The notes: generated by a model from the letters alone, not told the origin. A stretch of DNA of 64,000 nucleotides from Orbicella franksi (GCA_964199315.1 OZ116698.1:21576001-21640000); one strand, 5' to 3'. Shown: positions 24,599 to 34,226, counted from the first letter of the stretch. Numbers and translations: made by a program.

Positions 24599-26047
24599 AT
24601 TCCCTGATATTTTGACCTTTCACACCCTGATCAAAATCTCCAACATTGATCCAGAAATGTTTGGCTGTAGGTCTAATTTCCTGTAAAACTGTCTTTAGGT
24701 CTCTAAGATCAGTTACTGTACTTGAAAATACATATCAGGCTGTAAACAAGCATTTTAAGCAGATGTTAATTTTGGATAAGAAATAATACATTTGGCAGTT
24801 GGTGACTCCAGACAATGCACACAACAAAACATCAGATATTATAGTTCACCACAAGCCTGCGCAGCAGGCGTATAAAGGGGAGGGGTGAATGGCATTAGCA
24901 AGAATGAATGGCATTAGCAAGAGCACACAAATGTTCAAAATGTTCAAATGTTGTTGTTTATAGTGGAAATTGCAGAAAATGTGTTCGGCCACCTTAAGAG
25001 TCAGTAGTTAATAGGGTATCAAATTTTTGGTCAGGGCATTAATAGGATAAGAAAAATCATGGCAAGAAAAACGTTGATTTTGTTCTTAAATAGGGTAAGG
25101 ATTTTTGGAAGTGCCCCCACCCAATTTTTCTAGGAGTACCCCCTCCCCTGTGAGCATGGGGAGGGGATGTGGTTGTTTCAAATTGACTGATAGAAATATG
25201 TACATTACAAGTAAAAGCATCTCAAACAAATTAATTTTCAAAACATATAGCAGTTTACACGTGTAAGCTTAATGCCATGCGTTGTCTCATTCCAGATAAA
25301 TTGCTCTAAAAGATCTCGTTATGATTAAACAAAGACAAATAATTCATCTGAGATAAAATTATTCACCTCCTAAGGCAGATATAGCCATTCTACGTCTTTC
25401 ATCTTGTCTGCTGTGTGTGTGTGTGTGTGTGGGAGGGGGGGGAGGCAACACTCGCGAGAATACTGAAGATACCGTCGGTGGGGGGGGCAACACTCACGAA
25501 AATACACATATGGCGGGGTGGGGGGAGATACATGATGATGTTTCATGCAGAACGAAGCTAACTTAGAAGCAAGCTGAAATCCGATCAAAAGGGGAAGAAC
25601 TACATATTACTACATTAACAATGTAAATAAATCAAATATATTTTCTTTGTCCAAAAAGTTTACCTACAATCCGAATCGCTCGCCAACAAAGTTCTCCGGG
25701 TCCAAGCAAAGTTCTTCTCTGAATATACAATAGGTACACTGATTAAGAGAGAGTCCATCATACGAAAAAAGCATGAAAGCACTTCAAGGAAAGGTACTAA
25801 ATACACAGTGAATAAGTACAAATTAACCTTTAAGTCTGCCTTTTTTCAGCCTCGCTCAACTTTCGCGACGAACTGTTGTAAGTTGCAGAGAATGCTGGGA
25901 GCGTTCACTCATCTCGCGCGTTATCCGCGCGAGTTGTTGTCGTGACAATATTCGCGCGTAATCCATATTTGATACCCTATTTGCGACCAAAACGGCTGAA
26001 AATATATCCTTTGCGGCCGCATATACCTATCTCGCCCATATAAAGCC

Positions 26048-26362
26048 TGGTTCTCACATCCTGCCGACCTACCTGCAAGTATCGGTTTGGAAGGGCATGG
26101 CGTTCAACCCCCGCAGAGGGACTCCGATTTTTTTCATATTCGTGTTGGACTCTAGTAACTCTAGTACTCTAGTGACACGATTCGATCCATACTTACAGGT
26201 GGACTGGTTGAAAATTGCGCCCATTCGATTTCCACTTCGCACAAATTTGAGTACGTCGGCCATCCATCGCAGACGCGCCGGGACCCACTGGAACAAATCA
26301 CCGAAAATTCTCACTTACAACCGGCGGCTACGTCGCAGGTAGGTCGGCGGATTATGAGAACC
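26048..26362. mobile_element. TIR-bounded element at the left edge of the array, containing an inverted fragment of the array cassette
   Basis: ggttctcacatcctgccgacctacctgc (26048-26076) pairs with gcaggtaggtcggcggattatgagaacc (26335-26362); 26082-26134 is the 3' half of the cassette plus its T-run, on the + strand. Confidence 0.65.
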
Positions 26363-26367
26363 ACCTT

Positions 26368-26421
26368 GCCCTTCCAAACCGAAGCTCGGAAATGTGACCA
26401 CTGCGCTACAGGGAGGACTCC
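26368..26421 (-). pseudogene. Partial vtRNA-like unit U0 (5' half only)
   Basis: The cassette breaks off after the central hairpin; its 3' half is present inverted at 26082-26134. Confidence 0.65.
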
Positions 26422-26632
26422 TTGAATTGGGTAGCAAATTTAACGCTAACTATATGCACATCAAATGTAGTTTTTATTGACAGGCTAATCTTGCATTGGG
26501 AAATGTGCTATAGAAAAAAAATAACAAACAATGGACCAGTTATCAAGTTTTTTTTAAGTGCATTATTTAATCTTTTCGAAAAAGAAAAAAACTAACTTTC
26601 AAAAAAAAAAAAAACAGAGGAAAACAAAAGTT

Positions 26633-26715
26633 CGAGTCCCTCTGTGGGGTGCTGAACGCCATGCCCTTCCCAACCGAAGCTCGGAAATGTAACCACTGGG
26701 CTAGAGGGGGACTCC
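26633..26715 (-). ncRNA. vtRNA-like unit U1 (stem mismatches)
   Basis: 83-nt cassette; the terminal and central stems each carry a mismatch. Confidence 0.55.
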
Positions 26716-26925
26716 TTGAATTGGGTAGTGAATTTAACGTTACCTATCTGAACATGAAATGTAGTTTTTATTGACAGGCTAATCTTGCATTGGAAAAAAA
26801 AGTGTTATAAAAAAATGACAGACCTTCCATCAGTTTTAGAGTTTTTTTTTACTTTCATTATTAAATCTTTTCAACACAAAACAAAAGTAATTTTCAGAGG
26901 GAAAAAAAAAGATGTAAAAAAATTT

Positions 26926-27008
26926 GGAGTCCCTCTGTGGGGGGCTGAACGCCATGCCCTTCCGAACCGAAGCTCGGAAATGTAACCACTGGGCTACAGG
27001 GGGACTCC
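26926..27008 (-). ncRNA. vtRNA-like unit U2
   Basis: Near-consensus 83-nt cassette with T-run. Confidence 0.7.
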
Positions 27009-27215
27009 TTGAATTGGGTAACAAATTTAACGCTACCTATATGCACATGAAATGTAGTTTTTATTGACAGGCTAATCTTGCATGACGAAATGTGCTATAA
27101 AATAATTACAGAGCTTGCATCAGTTATAGAGTTTTTTTTAACTTAAGTATTAAATCTTTTCAACACAAAACAAAAGTAACTTTCAAGCAAAGGAAAAAAC
27201 AGAAAAAAAAAATTT

Positions 27216-27298
27216 GGAGTCCCTCTGTGCGGGGCTGAACGCCATGCCCTTCCGAAACGAAGCTCGGAAATGTAACCACTGGGCTACAGGGGGACTCC
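27216..27298 (-). ncRNA. vtRNA-like unit U3
   Basis: 83-nt cassette; the closing pair of the tetraloop is lost. Confidence 0.65.
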
Positions 27299-27504
27299 TT
27301 GAATTGGGTAGCAAATTTAGCGCTACCTATATGCACATGAAATGTACCTTTTATTGACAGGCTAATCTTGCATTGGAAAAAAAGTGTTATAAAAAAATGA
27401 CAGACCTTCCATCAGTTTTAGAGTTTTTTTAATTTCATTATTAAATCTTTTCAACACAAAACAAAAGTAACTCTCAGGGAAAAAAAAAAGATGTAAAAAA
27501 ATTT

Positions 27505-27587
27505 GGAGTCCCTCTGCGGGGGGCTGAAAGCCATGCCCTTCCGAACCGAAGCTCGGAAATGTAACCACTGGGCTACAGGGGGACTCC
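27505..27587 (-). ncRNA. vtRNA-like unit U4
   Basis: 83-nt cassette; B box GTTC changed to TTTC. Confidence 0.6.
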
Positions 27588-27790
27588 TTGAATTAGGTAG
27601 CAAATTTAACGCTACCTATATGCACATGAAATGTAGTTTTTATTGACAGGCTAATCTTGCATTGGAATAAAGTGTTATAAGAAAATGACAGACCTTCCAT
27701 CAGTTTGAGAGTTTTTTTTAATTTCATGATTAAATCTTTTCAACACAAAAAGAAAATAACTTAAAAAAAAAAAAAGAGGAAAAAAAATTT

Positions 27791-27873
27791 GGCGTCCCTC
27801 TGCGGGGGCCTGAACGCCATGCCCTTCCGAACCGAAGCTCGGAAATGTAACCACTGGGCTACAGGGGGACTCC
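27791..27873 (-). ncRNA. vtRNA-like unit U5
   Basis: 83-nt cassette; one terminal-stem mismatch. Confidence 0.65.
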
Positions 27874-28076
27874 TTGAATAGGGTAGAAAATTTAACGCAA
27901 CCTATCTGAACATGAAATGCAGTTTTTATTGACAGGCTAATCTTGCATTGGGAAATGTGCTATAAAAGATATGACAGACCTTGCATCAGTTATAGAGTTT
28001 TTTTCCAATTTCATTATTAAATCTTTTCAACACAAAACAAAACTAACTTTCCAGAAAAAAAGAGGACAAAAAATAT

Positions 28077-28159
28077 GGAGTCCCTCTGCGGGGGACTGAA
28101 CGCCATGCCCTTCCGAACCGAAGCTCGGAAATGTAACCACTGGGCTACAGGGGGACTCC
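28077..28159 (-). ncRNA. vtRNA-like unit U6
   Basis: Near-consensus 83-nt cassette. Confidence 0.7.
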
Positions 28160-28364
28160 TTGAATTGGGTAACAAATTTAACGCTACCTATCTGCACATG
28201 AAATGTAGTTTTTACTGACAGGCGAATCTTGCATGACGAATTGTGCTATGAAAAAACTACAGAGCTTGCATCAGTTATAGAGTTTTTTTAACTTAAGTAT
28301 TAAATCTTTTCAACACAAAACAAAAGTAACTTTCAAGCAAAAGAAAAAACAGAAAAAAAAATTT

Positions 28365-28447
28365 GGAGTCCCTCTGTGCGGGGCTGAACGCCATGCCCTT
28401 CCGAACTGAAGCTCGGAAATGTAACCACTGGGCTACAGGGGGACTCC
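28365..28447 (-). ncRNA. vtRNA-like unit U7
   Basis: 83-nt cassette; loop UUCA. Confidence 0.65.
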
Positions 28448-28652
28448 TTGAATAGGGTAGAAAATTTAACGCTACCTATATGCACATGAAAAGGAATTTT
28501 TATTGACAGGCTAATCTTGCATTGGGAAATGTGCTATAAAAAATATGACAGACCTTGCATCAGTTATAGAGTTTTTTTTTCAATTTCATTATTAAATCTT
28601 TTCAACACAAAACAAAAGTAACTTTCAGGGAAAAAAGGAGGACAAAAACTAT

Positions 28653-28734
28653 TTAGTCCCTCTGCGGGGGGCTGAACGCTATGCCCTTCCGAACCGAAGC
28701 TCGGAAATGTAACACTGGGCTACATGAGGACTCC
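28653..28734 (-). pseudogene. Degenerate vtRNA-like unit U8
   Basis: 1-nt deletion in the A box and several terminal-stem mismatches. Confidence 0.6.
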
Positions 28735-28938
28735 TTGAGTTGGTTAGCAAATTTAACGCTACATATTTGCACATGAAATGTAGTTTTTATTGACAGGCTA
28801 ATCTTGCATTGGAAAAAAAGTGTTATAAAAAAGTGACAGACCTTCCATCAGTTTTGGAGTTTTTTTTAATTTCATTATTAAATCTTTTCAAGACAAAACA
28901 AAAATAACTTTAAAGAAAAAAAAGAAGAAAAAAAATTT

Positions 28939-29021
28939 GGAGTCCCTCTGCGGGGGGCTGAACGCCATGCCCTTCCGAACCGAAGCTCGGAAATGTAACC
29001 ACTGGGCTACAGGGGGACTCC
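28939..29021 (-). ncRNA. vtRNA-like unit U9 (consensus copy)
   Basis: Matches the array consensus; followed by AAA and then T8. Confidence 0.75.
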
Positions 29022-29099
29022 TTGAATAGGGTAGCAAATTTAACGCTACCTATATGTACATGAAAAGGAATTTTTATTGACAGGCTAATCTTGCATTGG
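29022..29099 (-). promoter_or_regulatory. Upstream Pol III promoter block of unit U9 (repeated before nearly every unit)
   Basis: On the minus strand TGCAAGATTAGCCTGTCAATAAAAA lies at about -74 to -50, TATA at -33 to -30, and the palindrome GGTAGC-N9-GCTACC at -29 to -9. Confidence 0.55.
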
Positions 29100-29228
29100 G
29101 AAATGTGCTATAAAAAATATGACAGACGTTGCATCAGTTATAGAGTTTTTTCTTTCAATTTCATTATTAAATCTTTTCAACACAAAACAAAAGTAACTTT
29201 CAGGGGAAAAAAAGAGGACAAAAACTAT

Positions 29229-29311
29229 GGAGTCCCTCTGCGGGGAGCTGAACGCCATGCCCTTCCGAACGGAAGCTCGGAAATGTAACCACTGGGCTAC
29301 AGGGGGACTCC
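29229..29311 (-). ncRNA. vtRNA-like unit U10
   Basis: 83-nt cassette; loop UUCC. Confidence 0.7.
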
Positions 29312-29521
29312 TTGAATTGGGTAGCAAATTTAACGCTACATATTTGCACATGAAATGTAGTTTTTATTGACAGGCTAATCTTGCATTGGAAAAAAAGTGT
29401 TATAAAAAAATGACAGACCTTCCATCAGTTTTAGAGTTTTTTTTTAATTTCATTATTAAATCTTTTCAACACAAAACAAAAGTAACTTTCAGAGGAAAAA
29501 AAAAAAGATGTAAAAAAATTT

Positions 29522-29604
29522 GGAGTCCCTCTGTGGGGGGCTGAACGCCATGCCCTTCCGAACCAAAGTTCGGAAATGTAACCACTGGGCTACAGGGGGA
29601 CTCC
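29522..29604 (-). ncRNA. vtRNA-like unit U11
   Basis: 83-nt cassette; loop UUUG; the stem G-U pair has become A-U. Confidence 0.7.
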
Positions 29605-29808
29605 TTGAATTGAGTAGCAAATTTAACGCTACCTATTTGCACATGAAATGTAGTTTTTATTGGCAGGCTAATCTTGCATTGGAAAAAAAGTGTTATAAGA
29701 AAATGACAGACCTTCCATCAGTTTTAGAGTTTTTTTTTTTATTTCATGATCAAATCTTTTCAACACAAAACAAAAATAACTTAAAAAAAAAAGAGGGAAA
29801 AAAAATTT

Positions 29809-29891
29809 GGAGTCCCTCTGCGGGAGGCTGAACGCCATGCCCTTCCGAAACGAAACTCGGAAATGTAACCACTGGGCTACAGGGGGACTCC
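29809..29891 (-). ncRNA. vtRNA-like unit U12
   Basis: 83-nt cassette; hairpin apex altered. Confidence 0.65.
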
Positions 29892-30097
29892 TTGAATTGG
29901 GTAGCAAATTTAACGCTACCTATGTGCAAATGAAATGTAGTTTTTATTTACAGGCTAATCTTGCATTGGAAAAAAAGTGTTATAAAAAAATGACGGACCT
30001 TCCATCAGTTTTAGAGTTTTTTTTAATTTCATTATTAAATCTTTCCAACACAAAACAAAAGTAACTTTCAATAGAAAAACAAGATGAAAAAAAATTT

Positions 30098-30180
30098 GGA
30101 GTCCCTCTGCGGGGGGCTGAACGCCATGCCCTTCCGAACGGAAGCTCGGAAATGTAACCACTGGGCTACAGGGGGACTCC
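30098..30180 (-). ncRNA. vtRNA-like unit U13
   Basis: 83-nt cassette; loop UUCC. Confidence 0.7.
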
Positions 30181-30380
30181 TTGAATTGGGTAGGAAATTT
30201 AACGCTAGCTATCTGAACATGAAATGCAGTTTTTATTGACAGGCTAATCTTACATTGGAAAATGTGCTAGGAAAAAATGACAGAGCTTTGCTTAGTTATA
30301 TAGTTCTTTTAAGTCCATTATTTAACGTTTCACGACAAAACAAAGATAATGTTTGAGAAAAAAAATGGAAAAAAAAATTT

Positions 30381-30459
30381 GGAGTCCCTTTGCGGCTGAA
30401 CGCCATGCCCTTCCGAACCAAAGCTCGGAAATGTAACCACTGGGCTACAGGGGGATTCC
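30381..30459 (-). ncRNA. vtRNA-like unit U14 (4-nt deletion 3' of the B box)
   Basis: 79-nt cassette. Confidence 0.55.
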
Positions 30460-30661
30460 TTGAATTGGGTAGCAAATTTAACGCTACATATTTGCACATG
30501 AAATGTAGTTTTTATTGACAGGCTAATCTTGCATTGGAAAATGTGCTAGGAAAAAATGACAGACCTTTGCTCAGTTATACAGTTCTTTTAAGTCCATTAT
30601 TTAACGTTGTCACGACAAAACAAAGATAACGTTTGAGAAACAAAATGGAAAAACAAAATTT

Positions 30662-30740
30662 GGAGTCCCTCTGCGGCTGAACGCCATGCCCTTGCGAACC
30701 GAAGCGCGGAAATGGAACCACTGGGCTACAGGGGGACTCC
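30662..30740 (-). ncRNA. vtRNA-like unit U15 (same 4-nt deletion, hairpin mismatches)
   Basis: 79-nt cassette; possibly a pseudogene. Confidence 0.5.
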
Positions 30741-30954
30741 TTGAATTGGGTAACAAATTTAACGCTACCTATATGCACATGAAATGTAATTTTTATTGAC
30801 AGGGTAATCTTGCATTACGAAATGTGCTATGAAAAAATCAAAGACCTTGAATCAAGTATAAAGTTTTTTTTTTAAGTGCATTATTTAATCTTTTTAAAAC
30901 AAAACAAAAAACAACTTTTAAGAAAAAAAAAAAAAGAGAGAGAAAAAAAAATTT

Positions 30955-31036
30955 GGAGTCCCTCTGAGGGGGTTGAATGCCATGCCCTTCCGAACGGAAG
31001 CTGGGAAATATAACCACTGGGCTACAGGGGGACTCC
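30955..31036 (-). ncRNA. vtRNA-like unit U16 (diverged)
   Basis: 82-nt cassette with several substitutions. Confidence 0.5.
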
Positions 31037-31241
31037 TTGAATTAGATAGCAAATTTAACGCTACCTATATGCACATTAAAAGGAATTTTTATTGCCAGGC
31101 TAATCTTGCATTGGAAAATGTGCTATAAAAATATGACAGACCTTGCATCAGTTATAGAGAGTTTTTTTTAATTTCATTATTAAATCTTTTCAACACAAAA
31201 CAAAATAAACCTTCCAGATAAAAAAAAAGAAAAAAAAATTT

Positions 31242-31324
31242 GGAGTCCCTCTGCCGGGTGCTGAACGCCATGCCCTTCCGAAACGAAGCTCGGAAATGTA
31301 ACCACTGGGCTACAGGGGGACTCC
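31242..31324 (-). ncRNA. vtRNA-like unit U17
   Basis: 83-nt cassette. Confidence 0.6.
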
Positions 31325-31528
31325 TTGAATTGGGTAGAAAACTTAACGCTACCTATATGCACATGAAATGTAGGTTATATTGACAGGCTAATCTTGCATT
31401 TCGAAATGTGCTATGAAAAAATCAAAGACCTTGAATCAAATATAAAGTCTTTTTTTAAGTGCATTATTTAATCTTTTTAAAACAAAACAAAAAACAACTT
31501 TCAGGAAAAAAACAGAGAAAAAAAATTT

Positions 31529-31611
31529 GGAGTCCCTCTGCGGGGGGCTGAACGCCATGCCCTTCCGAACGGAAGCTCGGAAATGTAACCACTGGGCTAC
31601 AGGGGGACTCC
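31529..31611 (-). ncRNA. vtRNA-like unit U18
   Basis: 83-nt cassette; loop UUCC. Confidence 0.7.
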
Positions 31612-31816
31612 TTGAATTGGATACCAAATTTCACGCTACCTATATGCACATGAAGTGTAGGTTTTATTGATAGGCTAATGTTGCATTTGCAAATATGCTA
31701 TAAAACGAATGACGGACCTTGCATCAGGTATAGAGGTTTTTTAATTTCATTATTAAATCTTTTCAACACAAAACAAAAGTAACTTTCAAGGAAAAAAAAA
31801 AGAGGGAAAAAAATTT

Positions 31817-31899
31817 GGAGTCCCTCTGCGAGGGGTTGAGCACCATGTCCTTCCGAACCGAAGCTCGGAAATGTAACCACTGGGCTACAGGGAAACTCC
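31817..31899 (-). pseudogene. vtRNA-like unit U19 lacking its upstream block
   Basis: Only 31 bp separate it from U20; the B box is mutated. Confidence 0.55.
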
Positions 31900-31930
31900 T
31901 TAAATTGGGAGTCAGAGATAAAAAAAAATT

Positions 31931-32013
31931 GGAATCCCTCTGCAGGGGGCTAAACCTCATGCCCCTCCGAACCGAAGCTCGGAAGCGTAACCACTGGGCT
32001 ACAGGAGGACTCC
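31931..32013 (-). ncRNA. vtRNA-like unit U20 (diverged)
   Basis: 83-nt cassette; B-box region altered. Confidence 0.5.
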
Positions 32014-32218
32014 TTGAATAGGGTAGCAAATTTAACGCTACCTATATGCACAGAAAATGTAGGTTTTATTGACAGGCTAATCTTGCATTTGGAAATGTGC
32101 TATAAAGAAATGAGAGACCTTGCATGAGGTATAGAGTTTTTTTAAATTTCATTATTAAATCTTTTCAACACAAAACAAAAGTAACGTTCAGGAGAAAAAA
32201 AAAGATGAAAAAAAATTT

Positions 32219-32301
32219 GGAGTCCCTCTGCGGGGGGCTGAACGCCATGCCCTTCCGAACCGAAGCTCGGAAATGCAACCACTGGGCTACAGGGGGACTC
32301 C
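32219..32301 (-). ncRNA. vtRNA-like unit U21
   Basis: 83-nt cassette; GGTTAC changed to GGTTGC. Confidence 0.65.
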
Positions 32302-32506
32302 TTGAATTGGGTAGCAAATTTAACGCTACCTATTTGCACATGAAATGTAGTTTTTATTGACAGGCTAATCTTGCATTGGAAAAAAAGTGTTATAAAAAAA
32401 TGAGAGACCGTCCATCAGTTTTAGAGTTTTTTAATATCATTATTAAATCTTTTCAACACAAATCAAAATAACTTTAAAGAAAAAAAAAAAAGAGGAGAAA
32501 AAATTT

Positions 32507-32589
32507 GGAGTCCCTCTGCGAGGAGCTGAACGCCATGCCCTTCCGAACTGAAGCTCGGAAATGTAGCCACTGGGCTACAGGGGAACTCC
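32507..32589 (-). ncRNA. vtRNA-like unit U22
   Basis: 83-nt cassette; loop UUCA; GGCTAC. Confidence 0.55.
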
Positions 32590-32793
32590 TTGAATTAGGT
32601 AGCAAATTTAACGCTACCTATATGCACATAAAAAGGAATTTTCATTGACAGGCTAATCTTGCATTAGGAAATGTGCTATAAAAATATGACAGAGCTTGGA
32701 TCAGTTATAGAGTTTTTTTTGCAATTTCATTGTTAAATCTTTTGAACAGAAAACAAAAGTAACTTTTAAGAAAAAAAAGAGGAGAAAAAATGT

Positions 32794-32876
32794 GGAGTCC
32801 CTCTGCGGGGGGCTGACCGCCATGCCCTTCCTAACCGAAGATCGGAAATGTAACCACTGGGCTACAGGGGGACTCC
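32794..32876 (-). ncRNA. vtRNA-like unit U23 (central stem disrupted)
   Basis: 83-nt cassette; last unit of the array. Confidence 0.55.
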
Positions 32877-34226
32877 TTGAATTGGGTAGCAAATTTAACG
32901 CTACCTATATGCACATGAAATGTAGTTTTTATTGACAGGCTAATCTTGCATTGGGAAATGTGCTATGAAAAAAATTCCAGACCATGGATCAGTTATAAAG
33001 TTTTTTTTGAGTGCATTACTTAATGTTTTAAAATTAAAGCAAAAATAAACTTAAAGTGTTTGTCCATTTCTTAAACATAGGCACGGAAGACGAGCAAGAG
33101 TTTTTTTTTTTTTTGTGAAGTCTCGGAGATAGGAGCATTCATGGAACTGTTTACAAAAAAGATTTTGTTAATTTGACAAGTTTTTTTTGGGTGCGATGTA
33201 CAGGAAGAAAGAAACTGGGAATTTATGATGTACATACGATGTTACATCGGTAATGGTAAGATAGCTAAATAGTAAGCCATAAAAAGTTTGACTGAACAAA
33301 CTACAGTAATCTGACACGTCTCCAGATTAATGCAGATACCATCTTATTTTTTTCTTTGGTTCGTTCTTTGATAATACCCACACTGTAATTGGTGTGACAC
33401 GTGCATATGCATAACTCCCCCACTCACCGATCACATAGCCCTTCCAACCCCCAAGAGGAATTTTTGCTCAAAAATACTCAAGTTAAGAGACCTTTTTGCA
33501 TTTTATACGAGTCGTAAGTTTACCCTTTTCACACAACACAACACAACACAACAACACTACTTCACCGAAAATAGAAAGAAAGAGAAAAAAAAAACTCTCT
33601 TACACATTGAAAGTCTGATTTAATTAAATTGCACTTTAACTTGGTGCCAAGCAGTCTTCAAAGAACATTTGAGCAGTTTTGATACTTTTTACCTTTAAAA
33701 ATATCGGACTGAAAAGAGTGTCATAAAATGCCCATCAAAGGAAAATAAACTGCCACTGCAGAGACGTAAAAACCGTTCAGAAATGAAAGTTTTTTTTGCT
33801 AATATCCTGGGAACAATAGCCGATAACTTGTCAGCTCTAACTGGATTTACTCCCTTATGAAAAACAAGAGTGTGAAATTACCCTTTCTAACTAAAAAATA
33901 AAAACATCTCGTTATATTGGCATGCAACAAGAACAAAAAAATCGTTACCTGCACTTACTATTGTAAACGTTAGAACTGCTTCAAATCTGTTTCAAACCTC
34001 AAGGCTCATCTCGTTCGTAACTAAAATCCTCAACCTAACCTACAGAAAATGTCGAAGTAAGTCCAACATATGAATACTTCTCCTCTTTTATCGAAGAATA
34101 AATATGGCCATTCTAAACTGTGTCGGGATCAAATCTTCTCGCATACCATTTACCTTTACAACAAGAAATTTGATTGGCTGTTTATAGTACATCCAATCTG
34201 ATTGGTGTAACATACATACATCTCTG

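What the first reader, a model, noticed from the sequence alone, without database searches (positions are those of the whole stretch)
26368..33055. Tandem array of ~24 vault-RNA-like Pol III genes in an apparent cnidarian genome
Seen: each ~290-bp unit carries, on the minus strand, an 83-nt cassette followed by AAA and an oligo-T run. Its ends form a 12-bp stem (GGAGUCCC-C-CUG / CAG-A-GGGACUCC), with UAGCCCAGUGGUUAC near the 5' end and GUUCAGCCCCCCGCAG near the 3' end. Established: vault RNAs are ~80-150-nt Pol III transcripts with a 5'/3' terminal stem, internal A and B boxes, a variable central domain and a U-tail. Human vtRNA1-1, recalled from memory, reads UAGCUCAGCGGUUAC (13/15 identical here, including the GGUUAC extension) and GUUCGAGACCCGCGG (CCCGC conserved here). 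It is not a tRNA: there is no D stem, no 7-nt anticodon loop, and the terminal stem is too long. Inference: a vtRNA gene family amplified far beyond the few copies known in vertebrates. vtRNAs are best documented in deuterostomes and trypanosomes, and I do not know of a described anthozoan array, though I cannot check. An array like this would normally be masked as satellite DNA and missed.
Basis: partly seen in the sequence, partly recalled or inferred. Interest (0 to 1): 0.95.

Follow-up and report, generated by a model that had tools for sequence, protein, structure and literature searches.

The report
tRNA-derived Pol III-type tandem repeat family
The ~24-unit array is real, but it belongs to a very abundant coral repeat family built on a tRNA-derived small-RNA gene that looks RNA polymerase III-transcribed, and nothing tested here identifies it as vault RNA.

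Summary
Observation confirmed. Window 26364-33055 holds 24 head-to-tail units of ~287 bp. On the minus strand each carries an 83-nt cassette with a tRNA-type A box, a near-consensus B box, a 12-position terminal stem and an oligo-T run.

Interpretation only partly supported. The Rfam Vault model gives no match, even at E<=10 on single cassettes. The same model does find Vault hits in a hydrozoan (PMC11067881). The motifs said to be shared with vtRNA are generic tRNA A/B boxes.

The cassette folds into a cloverleaf-like four-way junction. It is homologous to a second tRNA-like tandem family in coral contigs.

A metagenome scan recovered 256 copies on about 75 coral contigs, in arrays of ~287 or ~490 bp. 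All share the upstream TATA-containing block, and 91% keep the T-run. The family looks very high-copy.

Evidence for selection is mixed. There is no covariation (91.1% paired versus 91.0% shuffled). Orthologous copies diverge as fast in the cassette as in the spacer. RNA-run coverage mirrors DNA.

Best reading: a tRNA-derived Pol III-type gene-plus-spacer unit amplified at DNA level, with most copies drifting. RNA identity and expression are untested.

The scan flagged similar "vault-like" arrays elsewhere in this genome (s1-228908, s1-237911, s1-228916); these are unchecked.

The parts
26364..33055 (-). Tandem array of 24 units (~287 bp each; one 114-bp short unit), all cassettes on the minus strand
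   Evidence: TRF period 287, 86% matches. 24 A-box anchors spaced 279-296 bp. BLAST of the core against the window.
28939..29021 (-). Representative 83-nt cassette, identical to the array consensus: predicted small-RNA coding part
   Evidence: Folds as a cloverleaf-like four-way junction, -42.3 kcal/mol, z -4.6.
29010..29021 (-). 5' strand of the terminal stem (GGAGUCCCCCUG)
   Evidence: Pairs with 28939-28950 (CAGAGGGACUCC) with one C.A mismatch. 87% of cells are paired across 136 family copies.
28995..29009 (-). A box with extension (TAGCCCAGTGGTTAC); the first 11 nt fit the tRNA-type A-box consensus TRGCNNAGTGG
   Evidence: Exact pattern match. Nearly invariant across the family; part of it was the search pattern.
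28973..28992 (-). Central hairpin UUCCGAGC-UUCG-GUUCGGAA (8 bp with a UUCG tetraloop), in the place of an anticodon arm
   Evidence: RNAfold. Columns >=90% conserved.
28954..28966 (-). B-box-like element GGCGTTCAGCCCC (GTTCAGCCCC against consensus GTTCRANNCC, one mismatch), about 45 nt after the A box
   Evidence: Read from the sequence. A subfamily elsewhere has it broken (GGTGT-CAGCC).
28928..28938 (-). AAA plus a T8 run: predicted Pol III terminator
   Evidence: In the wider family, 196 of 216 copies have T>=4 starting 72-100 nt from +1, mode 81-87.
29022..29099 (-). Conserved upstream block with a TATA-like CATATAGG at about -35/-28 and TTAAATTT at -22/-15: candidate external promoter
   Evidence: 91% conserved within the array against 86% for the spacer. 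0.88-0.91 identity to consensus across 29 loci against 0.66-0.84 for the spacer. Present upstream of nearly all family copies.
31900..32014 (-). Short 114-bp unit: a cassette followed after ~19 nt by the next cassette, with spacer and most of the promoter deleted
   Evidence: The same short unit is present in the orthologous contig L095.
26364..26421 (-). Last array cassette, truncated after position ~57
26082..26140 (+). Inverted partial cassette (positions ~40-83), T-run and the long-form downstream block CATATTCGTGTTGGACTC
   Evidence: BLAST hit on the + strand. Inverted repeats I1 and I3.
26048..26076 (.). One arm of a 29-nt inverted duplication (partner 26335-26363) marking a ~290-bp inversion at the array end
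   Evidence: the repeat finder I4, 86% complementary. The flanking element is contiguous and uninverted in L009.

Best explanation
The array is one locus of a large, tRNA-derived tandem-repeat family of Orbicella-group corals. Its repeat unit is a complete Pol III-type transcription unit plus spacer.

Shown:
- Each unit carries an upstream TATA-containing block, an 82-83-nt cassette with A and B boxes, and an oligo-T run immediately after a 12-bp terminal stem.
- The same promoter-cassette-terminator module recurs in arrays with ~287-bp and ~490-bp units and in short clusters on many contigs.
- The 287-bp unit of this window is a deletion derivative of the ~490-bp unit.
- The cassette is homologous to a second tRNA-like tandem family.

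Inferred:
- The founder was a tRNA-like gene, possibly tRNA-Cys-like, that acquired a 5-bp longer acceptor-type stem, lost a functional anticodon loop (now a UUCG-capped hairpin), and uses a hybrid promoter: internal A/B boxes plus an external TATA-like box, as in 4.5SH, 4.5SI, vault and 7SL genes.
- At least some copies are transcribed by Pol III from the G at +1 to the T-run. The product would be an ~85-90-nt, 5'-triphosphate, U-tailed cloverleaf/panhandle RNA.
- The family grew by DNA-level processes (unequal crossing-over, segmental spread, small inversions), because promoter and spacer are copied together with the cassette.
- Most individual copies, including those of this array, now drift almost neutrally. 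Family-level selection or gene conversion keeps the promoter and the first ~60 nt of the cassette closer to consensus.

What the RNA does, and which protein it binds, is unknown. Vault association is one untested possibility among several (La, Ro-like, tRNA-processing enzymes).
For: Array and motifs.

Fold: cloverleaf-like, z -4.6 for the window copy and -5.7 for the family consensus.

Family size and spread:
- One exact 18-mer scan of metagenome contigs returned 99 stretches, about 75 of them coral contigs. They carry 256 BLAST-detectable copies, mostly same-strand tandem with periods of ~285-290 or ~470-500 bp.
- Summed cassette word depth in a probable genomic run is ~238,000, against 118-250 for single family contigs.

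Module conservation:
- The -40..-1 block is present upstream of nearly all copies.
- The T-run is correctly placed in 196/216 copies.
- Identity to consensus over 29 loci: cassette 1-50, 0.94-0.97; last 60 nt upstream, 0.88-0.91; spacer, 0.66-0.84. Within the array: 95% / 91% / 86%.
- Homology between divergent arrays is often limited to about -63..+105.

Other points:
- The long and short units are homologous.
- The L018 family is related: alignment z = 7 against shuffles, and ARAGORN calls it tRNA-Cys-like.
- Precedent for A/B-box genes with TATA-like boxes at -31/-24 sitting in hundreds of tandem repeats: 4.5SH RNA (PMC7279448).
- Tandem ncRNA gene arrays are common in another cnidarian (PMC11067881).
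Against: No direct evidence of transcription.
- In three RNA runs the depth profile over cassette, promoter and spacer resembles that of the probable DNA run.
- RNA-run contigs cross the predicted +1 into the promoter, for example 26943-27081. They may be DNA carry-over or read-through.

No covariation.
- 91.1% of cells are paired against 91.0% in shuffles. The covariation score is 0.084 against 0.084.

No per-copy constraint in the orthologous comparison.
- Against L095/L046 (97.3% identity), the cassette changed at 2.47% and the spacer at 1.60%.
- The changes are symmetric between the two lineages: 18 and 16.

Other caveats:
- A subfamily with a broken B box has still amplified in at least 9 loci.
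- Part of the cassette's apparent conservation (positions 9-26) is forced by the search pattern.
- The copy-number estimate rests on summed assembler depths without a known single-copy depth.
Confidence: 0.55

Rival explanations
1. One reading: the cassettes are vault RNA genes, the RNA component of the MVP/TEP1 vault particle, amplified into arrays in a coral.
For: - The layout resembles vtRNA genes: terminal panhandle, A box with a GGTTAC extension, B box near the 3' end, U-tail, plus an external TATA-like element.
- Cnidarians have MVP (PMC3762200, listed). Vault RNA hits are reported for Hydractinia.
- vtRNAs evolve fast and are hard to find by homology (PMC2655684).
Against: - Rfam Vault gives no match at gathering threshold. 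It also gives none at E<=10 on the array, on a single cassette, or on the family-consensus cassette. The model does reach a hydrozoan.
- The shared motifs are generic tRNA A/B boxes; the same 18-mer occurs in bacterial tRNAs.
- The interior is a conserved tRNA-like cloverleaf, not a variable central domain.
- The copy number is far beyond any known vtRNA family, with many decayed copies.
- A sister family with the same terminal stem is tRNA-Cys-like.
Confidence: 0.07
2. The unit is a mobile non-autonomous element. It would be a SINE-like or Penelope-/circle-mediated concatemer built around a tRNA-like Pol III unit that inserts as tandem, sometimes inverted, multimers. On this reading it is not a resident gene array.
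For: - Short arrays of 2-7 units sit inside long contigs at many loci.
- Arrays begin and end at various unit positions.
- There are head-to-head inverted junctions in L024 and L085 and an inverted partial copy at the end of this array.
- Other first-reader notes in this genome describe TSD-flanked, circularly permuted or inverted concatemers of tRNA-like units. These are unchecked, and it is not known whether they are the same family.
Against: - The upstream promoter block and the spacer are part of every copy. The T-run directly after the cassette would stop a Pol III transcript before the spacer, so classical SINE retroposition cannot copy the unit.
- No body or LINE-like tail follows the head.
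- No target-site duplications beyond chance at ~45 internal array boundaries. The boundaries are fuzzy, so this is a weak negative.
- No hammerhead ribozyme match in the unit.
Confidence: 0.18
3. The family is an inert satellite. The Pol III signals are relics of the tRNA-like founder, the copies are not transcribed to any useful extent, and the better-conserved cassette reflects GC-biased gene conversion and search bias.
For: - No covariation.
- Orthologous divergence is not reduced in the cassette.
- The RNA-run profile resembles DNA.
- The B-box-broken subfamily amplified all the same.
- The whole ~490-bp unit, spacer included, is a coherent family at ~80% identity to consensus.
Against: - The promoter block, which is AT-rich and so not favoured by GC-biased conversion, is also better conserved than the spacer.
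- The T-run is kept at the right place in 91% of copies.
- The consensus retains a perfect 12-bp stem and a strongly stable fold (z -5.7).
Confidence: 0.15

Closest known systems
Vault RNA genes (Rfam RF00006)
   Same: A Pol III small RNA of ~80-150 nt with a 5'/3' terminal stem, internal A and B boxes, a U-tail, and external TATA-type upstream elements.
   Different: - No match to the Vault covariance model, even at E<=10.
- The interior is a conserved tRNA-like cloverleaf.
- Hundreds to thousands of copies in gene-plus-spacer arrays.
- No evidence of vault association.
Rodent 4.5SH RNA genes (and 4.5SI), PMC7279448
   Same: - A lineage-specific small RNA gene derived from another Pol III RNA.
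- Internal A/B boxes plus a TATA-like box near -30.
- For 4.5SH, hundreds of copies, each embedded in a tandemly repeated unit.
   Different: - The 4.5SH unit is 4-5 kb and 7SL/B1-derived; here the unit is 0.29-0.49 kb and tRNA-derived.
- 4.5SH expression and turnover have been measured; here expression is untested.
Tandem arrays of tRNA and other ncRNA genes in cnidarians (Hydractinia, Nematostella; PMC11067881)
   Same: Evenly spaced head-to-tail arrays of tens to hundreds of nearly identical Pol III gene-plus-spacer units in a cnidarian genome.
   Different: - Those arrays encode canonical tRNAs, 5S, U-snRNAs and similar RNAs recognised by tRNAscan/Rfam. This cassette is recognised by neither.
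- That paper reports no RNA tandem arrays in cnidarians other than Hydractinia and Nematostella.
tRNA-derived SINEs and SINE-derived satellites (e.g. PMC10702118)
   Same: A tRNA-related head with A and B boxes. Tandem arrays can arise from such sequences.
   Different: - Here the external promoter and spacer are part of the unit.
- A terminator follows the head directly.
- No body, tail or TSDs were seen.
Primate snaR gene clusters (PMC3045588)
   Same: A young, lineage-restricted Pol III small-RNA family expanded in tandem clusters from a repeat-derived founder.
   Different: snaR genes are Alu/7SL-derived with tens of copies, and their protein partner (NF90) is known.

Membership tests
Vault RNA (Rfam RF00006) | Significant match to the Vault covariance model (sequence plus structure homology) | tested here: not met
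   There were no Vault hits at gathering threshold on the whole window. There were none at E<=10 on 26000-33400, on a single cassette, or on the family-consensus cassette L096:2105-2215.
Vault RNA (Rfam RF00006) | Pol III gene anatomy: internal A and B boxes, oligo-T terminator, 5'/3' terminal stem | tested here: met
   These features are shared with any tRNA-derived Pol III gene, so they do not discriminate.
Vault RNA (Rfam RF00006) | External upstream elements (TATA-like box, PSE-type block) in addition to the internal boxes | tested here: inconclusive
   A conserved upstream block with a TATA-like element at about -34/-29 is present. No U6 or other type-3 promoter from this genome was available for comparison, and there is no functional test.
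Vault RNA (Rfam RF00006) | Physical association with the MVP/TEP1 vault particle | not testable with these tools
   Needs vault purification or MVP/TEP1 RIP in coral tissue.
Vault RNA (Rfam RF00006) | Expressed as a discrete ~80-150-nt RNA | tested here: inconclusive
   Read laying on 3 RNA runs and 1 probable DNA run. The profiles are alike, and the contigs cross the predicted +1. Only assembler contigs were available, with no small-RNA data.
Canonical tRNA | Cloverleaf with a 7-bp acceptor stem, a D arm and a 7-nt anticodon loop; detected by tRNA finders or models | tested here: not met
   - ARAGORN made 0 calls in the window and 0 on family copies in 60 loci.
- Rfam tRNA and tRNA-Sec gave no hits at E<=10.
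- The acceptor-type stem is 12 bp.
- The central hairpin allows only a 4-, 6- or 8-nt loop.
tRNA-derived SINE | Head followed by a body and a LINE-related or A-rich tail, dispersed with TSDs, without the donor's upstream promoter | tested here: not met
   Nearly all copies carry the same upstream block and a T-run right after the head. There were no TSDs at ~45 array boundaries.
Retrozyme / hammerhead-bearing tandem repeats | A self-cleaving hammerhead motif in each unit | tested here: not met
   No Hammerhead family hits among the Rfam matches at E<=10 over the array.
Pol III-transcribed tandem gene arrays (4.5SH type) | A/B-box gene with a TATA-like box near -30, embedded in a tandemly repeated unit at high copy number | tested here: met
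   compared with the description in PMC7279448. This is similarity of organisation, not homology.
Pol III-transcribed tandem gene arrays (4.5SH type) | Demonstrated Pol III transcription of the units | tested here: inconclusive
   (see above).

The most novel reading that the evidence does not exclude
The cassette encodes an abundant, so far undescribed scleractinian small RNA. It would be either the coral counterpart of vault RNA or the RNA of another RNP, supplied by thousands of gene copies. Alternatively, the unit could be a new kind of tandem-inserting mobile element that uses a tRNA-like Pol III module in place of a ribozyme.
Probability: 0.12. Interest if true: 0.8.

Novelty: new variant of a known kind. 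Interest (0 to 1): 0.4.

Why it matters
If some copies are transcribed, Orbicella-group reef corals would make a lineage-specific ~85-90-nt tRNA-like Pol III RNA from hundreds to thousands of genes. Such an RNA could dominate small-RNA libraries. It would carry 5'-triphosphate panhandle ends of the kind sensed by innate immunity. It could also be mistaken for tRNA fragments or miRNA precursors.

There is a practical side. Such arrays are masked as unclassified satellites, and they are a recurring source of 'vault-like' false leads in this genome.

The family also offers a clean case of how a tRNA gene can turn into a new small-RNA gene and then into a satellite.

If it is inert, it is simply an abundant tRNA-derived satellite.

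Tried and rejected
- **Rfam at gathering and E-value thresholds**. Only chance-level hits (miRNA hairpin models matching the GC stem, AT-rich sRNA models in the spacer). No Vault, tRNA, tRNA-Sec, Y RNA, 7SL or hammerhead.
- **ARAGORN**. No family copy was called. The four 'tRNA-Cys' calls in L018 are a related tRNA-like family that Rfam's tRNA model does not accept.
- **RNAalifold on the raw MAFFT alignment**. It returned essentially no consensus structure because of gap columns. I replaced it with explicit pair counting.
- **Covariation**. None.
- **Expression from public runs**. Only Logan contigs were available. The RNA and DNA profiles are alike, so the result is not informative either way.
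- **TSD search at array boundaries**. Nothing beyond chance. The single 12-nt match is an internal unit sequence.
- **Scans of bacterial/archaeal genome contigs and viral contigs** for the 18-mer. Only an unrelated coding sequence and a tRNA.
- **Exact search for the 29-nt inverted-duplication sequence in the loci**. No match; BLAST then found the flank in L009.
- **tRNA-Sec-like reading** (6-bp D stem with 4-nt loop, ~83 nt, external promoter). Considered and dropped: no long variable arm, no UCA loop, no Rfam tRNA-Sec hit.
- **Literature searches** for coral vault RNA or coral tRNA-derived satellites. No description of this family was found.

Full report
**1.

Tandem Repeats Finder reports a 287-bp period over 26367-33007 (19.2 + 3.8 copies, 86% matches). 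The A-box string TAGCCCAGTGGTTAC occurs 23 times with <=2 mismatches, all on the minus strand inside the array, against 0.03 expected from shuffles. Allowing 4 mismatches gives 24 anchors spaced 279-296 bp, plus one 114-bp unit.

Every unit reads, on the minus strand, GGAGTCCCCCTG / TAGCCCAGTGGTTAC / ATTTCCGAGCTTCGGTTCGGAA / GGGCATGGCGTTCAGCCCCCC / GCAGAGGGACTCC, then AAA and a T-run.

A consensus copy (28939-29021) folds into a four-way junction (-42.3 kcal/mol, z = -4.6 against dinucleotide shuffles). Its parts are:
- a 12-position terminal stem with one C.A mismatch;
- a 6-bp stem with a 4-nt loop over the A box;
- an 8-bp stem closed by a UUCG tetraloop;
- a T-arm-like hairpin over the B box.

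So the interior is a conserved, tRNA-like cloverleaf rather than a variable domain.

**2. Tests of known families**

ARAGORN finds no tRNA in the window. Rfam finds nothing at gathering thresholds.

With permissive filters at E<=10, neither Vault nor tRNA, tRNA-Sec, Y RNA or hammerhead models appear. This was tried on:
- the array;
- a single cassette;
- the family-consensus cassette from another contig.

The hits that do appear are chance-level hairpin or AT-rich matches.

This matters because the Rfam Vault model is reported to detect 3-4 Vault loci per genome in the hydrozoan Hydractinia (PMC11067881). The model can therefore reach cnidarians.

The A-box identity with vtRNA that prompted the finding is not specific. 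The same 18-mer occurs in ordinary bacterial tRNA genes found by my own pattern scan (L084, L090, L093).

**3. The array is one locus of a large family**

A single exact-pattern scan of metagenome contigs (CCTRTAGCCCAGTGGTTA) returned 99 stretches. About 75 are coral contigs. BLAST with the promoter-cassette core finds 256 copies on them, nearly always same-strand tandem, with periods of ~285-290 or ~470-500 bp. Many short clusters of 2-7 units sit inside contigs of up to 14 kb.

Nearly all copies share two features:
- the block ATGTGCATATAGGTACCGTTAAATTTGCTACCCAATTCAA immediately upstream;
- a T-run placed correctly: 196 of 216 copies have T>=4 starting 72-100 nt from +1, mode 81-87.

The family consensus has a perfect 12-bp terminal stem, GGAGUCCCCCUG/CAGGGGGACUCC, and folds even better (z = -5.7).

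The ~490-bp unit is the long form. The 287-bp unit of this window lacks about 200 nt of mid-spacer but is homologous upstream to about -170.

In a probable genomic run, the summed word depth over the cassette is ~238,000, against 118-250 for single family contigs. This points to a copy number of order 10^3, though the single-copy depth is unknown.

An identical 295-aa ORF from the window lies on NCBI assembly GCA_002042975.1. From my own knowledge of the accession, that is Orbicella faveolata. The runs that hold the array are coral or coral-metagenome runs.

**4. Origin**

On contig L018 the family sits next to six copies of a second tandem unit: GAGTCCCCCTTGACCAGGGGTAACGC...GGTTCAAGACCCGCGGGGGACTC followed by a T-run. 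ARAGORN calls four of them as odd tRNA-Cys(GCA). Rfam's tRNA model does not accept them.

The two cassettes align with z = 7 over shuffles. They share the terminal stem, the A-box region and the B-box region.

The cassette is therefore tRNA-derived. Relative to a tRNA, the A box sits 5 nt further from the 5' end, which accounts for the 12-bp instead of 7-bp acceptor-type stem. The anticodon arm has become a closed hairpin.

**5. Evidence for and against function**

For:
- Within the array, identity to consensus is 95% in the cassette, 91% in the 78-nt upstream block and 86% in the spacer.
- Across 29 loci with ~490-bp units it is 0.94-0.97 (cassette 1-50), 0.88 (51-75), 0.77 (76-100), 0.66-0.84 (spacer) and 0.88-0.91 (last 60 nt upstream).
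- Between divergent arrays, BLAST homology is often confined to about -63..+105.
- The architecture combines an internal A box (perfect to TRGCNNAGTGG), a B-box-like element ~45 nt on, a TATA-like element near -30 and an immediate terminator. This is the hybrid Pol III promoter type described for the 4.5SH and 4.5SI genes. 4.5SH is also encoded by hundreds of tandem units (PMC7279448).

Against:
- On 136 distinct cassettes, the proposed 31 pairs are 91.1% paired against 91.0% in column shuffles. The covariation score equals the shuffle mean. Pairing is kept by conservation only, and changes are not compensated.
- Contigs L095 and L046 are orthologous or allelic to this very array. They are 97.3% identical in register against 87-89% out of register, and they share the 114-bp unit. 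In that comparison the cassette changed at 2.47% (36/1458), the upstream 60 nt at 2.29% and the spacer at 1.60% (38/2375).
- Those changes are symmetric between the two lineages. Individual copies are therefore not visibly constrained.
- A subfamily with a broken B box (GGTGT-CAGCC) is present in at least nine loci.
- For expression, only assembler contigs of public runs could be laid. In two poly(A) runs and one random-primed RNA run, the depth profile resembles that of the probable DNA run. RNA-run contigs run from inside the cassette across +1 to about -73. This shows presence, not a discrete Pol III transcript.

**6. Mobile-element reading**

The promoter and spacer travel with the cassette, and the T-run would end a Pol III transcript before the spacer.

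I found no target-site duplications beyond chance at ~45 internal array boundaries and no hammerhead motif.

However, the arrays are structurally restless:
- L024 and L085 have head-to-head inverted junctions.
- The array in this window ends in a ~290-bp inversion marked by a 29-nt inverted duplication (26048-26076 / 26335-26363). An inverted partial cassette lies at 26082-26134, and the flank is contiguous in L009.

Other first-stage notes on this genome list TSD-flanked or circularly permuted concatemers of tRNA-like units. I could not check whether they are the same family, so I keep a mobile reading at about 0.18.

**7. Verdict**

The array and its anatomy are real. Calling it vault RNA is not justified: the one available homology test fails, the resemblance is generic to tRNA-derived Pol III genes, and the family behaves like a high-copy repeat.

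The best-supported description is a tRNA-derived, Pol III-type gene-plus-spacer unit amplified at DNA level in Orbicella-group corals. Most copies are drifting. Expression and function are unknown.

In organisation it is closest to 4.5SH-type tandem Pol III genes and to cnidarian ncRNA gene arrays, but it encodes an RNA that no current model recognises. I rate it a new variant of a known kind, of moderate interest.

The scan has flagged similar 'vault-like' arrays elsewhere in this genome (s1-228908, s1-237911, s1-228916). They should be read in the light of this result.

Noticed in passing
window 26048-26363: There is a ~290-bp inversion at the array end. A 29-nt inverted duplication (26048-26076 / 26335-26363) brackets an inverted partial cassette with its T-run and part of a flanking element. 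About 17 nt of the cassette (positions ~40-57) are also duplicated. This is the pattern expected from staggered-break inversion.
   Followed up: partly
window 25867-26363; L009 417-772; L005/L038 ~7790-7865: The GC-rich sequence flanking the array ('X') is itself repeated. It is contiguous in contig L009, again next to family copies. Related pieces (tacctatMtMgcccatataa...) replace the promoter beyond about -30 in L045 and L088. Its nature was not determined; it could be part of a larger composite element or a gene fragment.
   Followed up: partly
L018 1387-5225: This contig holds a second tRNA-like tandem family of six copies spaced 450-1170 bp. It shares the terminal stem GAGUCCCCC/GGGGGACUC and has a canonical B box (GGTTCAAGACC). 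ARAGORN calls four copies tRNA-Cys(GCA) with the anticodon at an abnormal position. Rfam's tRNA model gives no hit.
   Followed up: partly
window 31900-32014; L095 ~130-250: A 114-bp short unit (cassette directly followed by the next cassette) is shared with the orthologous metagenome contig. The deletion therefore predates the ~2.6% divergence between the two sources.
   Followed up: yes
L013, L021, L030, L032, L035, L044, L052, L063, L066: These loci carry a subfamily with GGGC>GGAC, GGCG>GGTG, a 1-nt deletion that breaks the B box (GGTGT-CAGCC), and an ATAGGGGGACTCC 3' strand. The copies are very similar to one another across many loci, which suggests recent amplification despite the broken B box.
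   Followed up: no
L024 1380-2400; L085 9700-10200: Two family copies meet in head-to-head (divergent) junctions. One partner has a promoter shortened by a deletion between two CCAAT motifs. The same junction type occurs in two contigs.
   Followed up: partly
L011, L034, L074 (Ga0123355/Ga0123357 contigs): An unrelated repeat shares only the A-box 18-mer (TTTAWCCCCCTGTAGCCCAGTGGTTACTATATGTACCACCAGTTTAAC...). It looks like a tRNA-head SINE of another organism.
   Followed up: no
window 35278-55607: Long minus-strand ORFs lie upstream of the array on the same strand (other notes call them ninein-related). The array lies 3' of them, so read-through transcription could contribute to array sequence in poly(A) RNA runs.
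   Followed up: no
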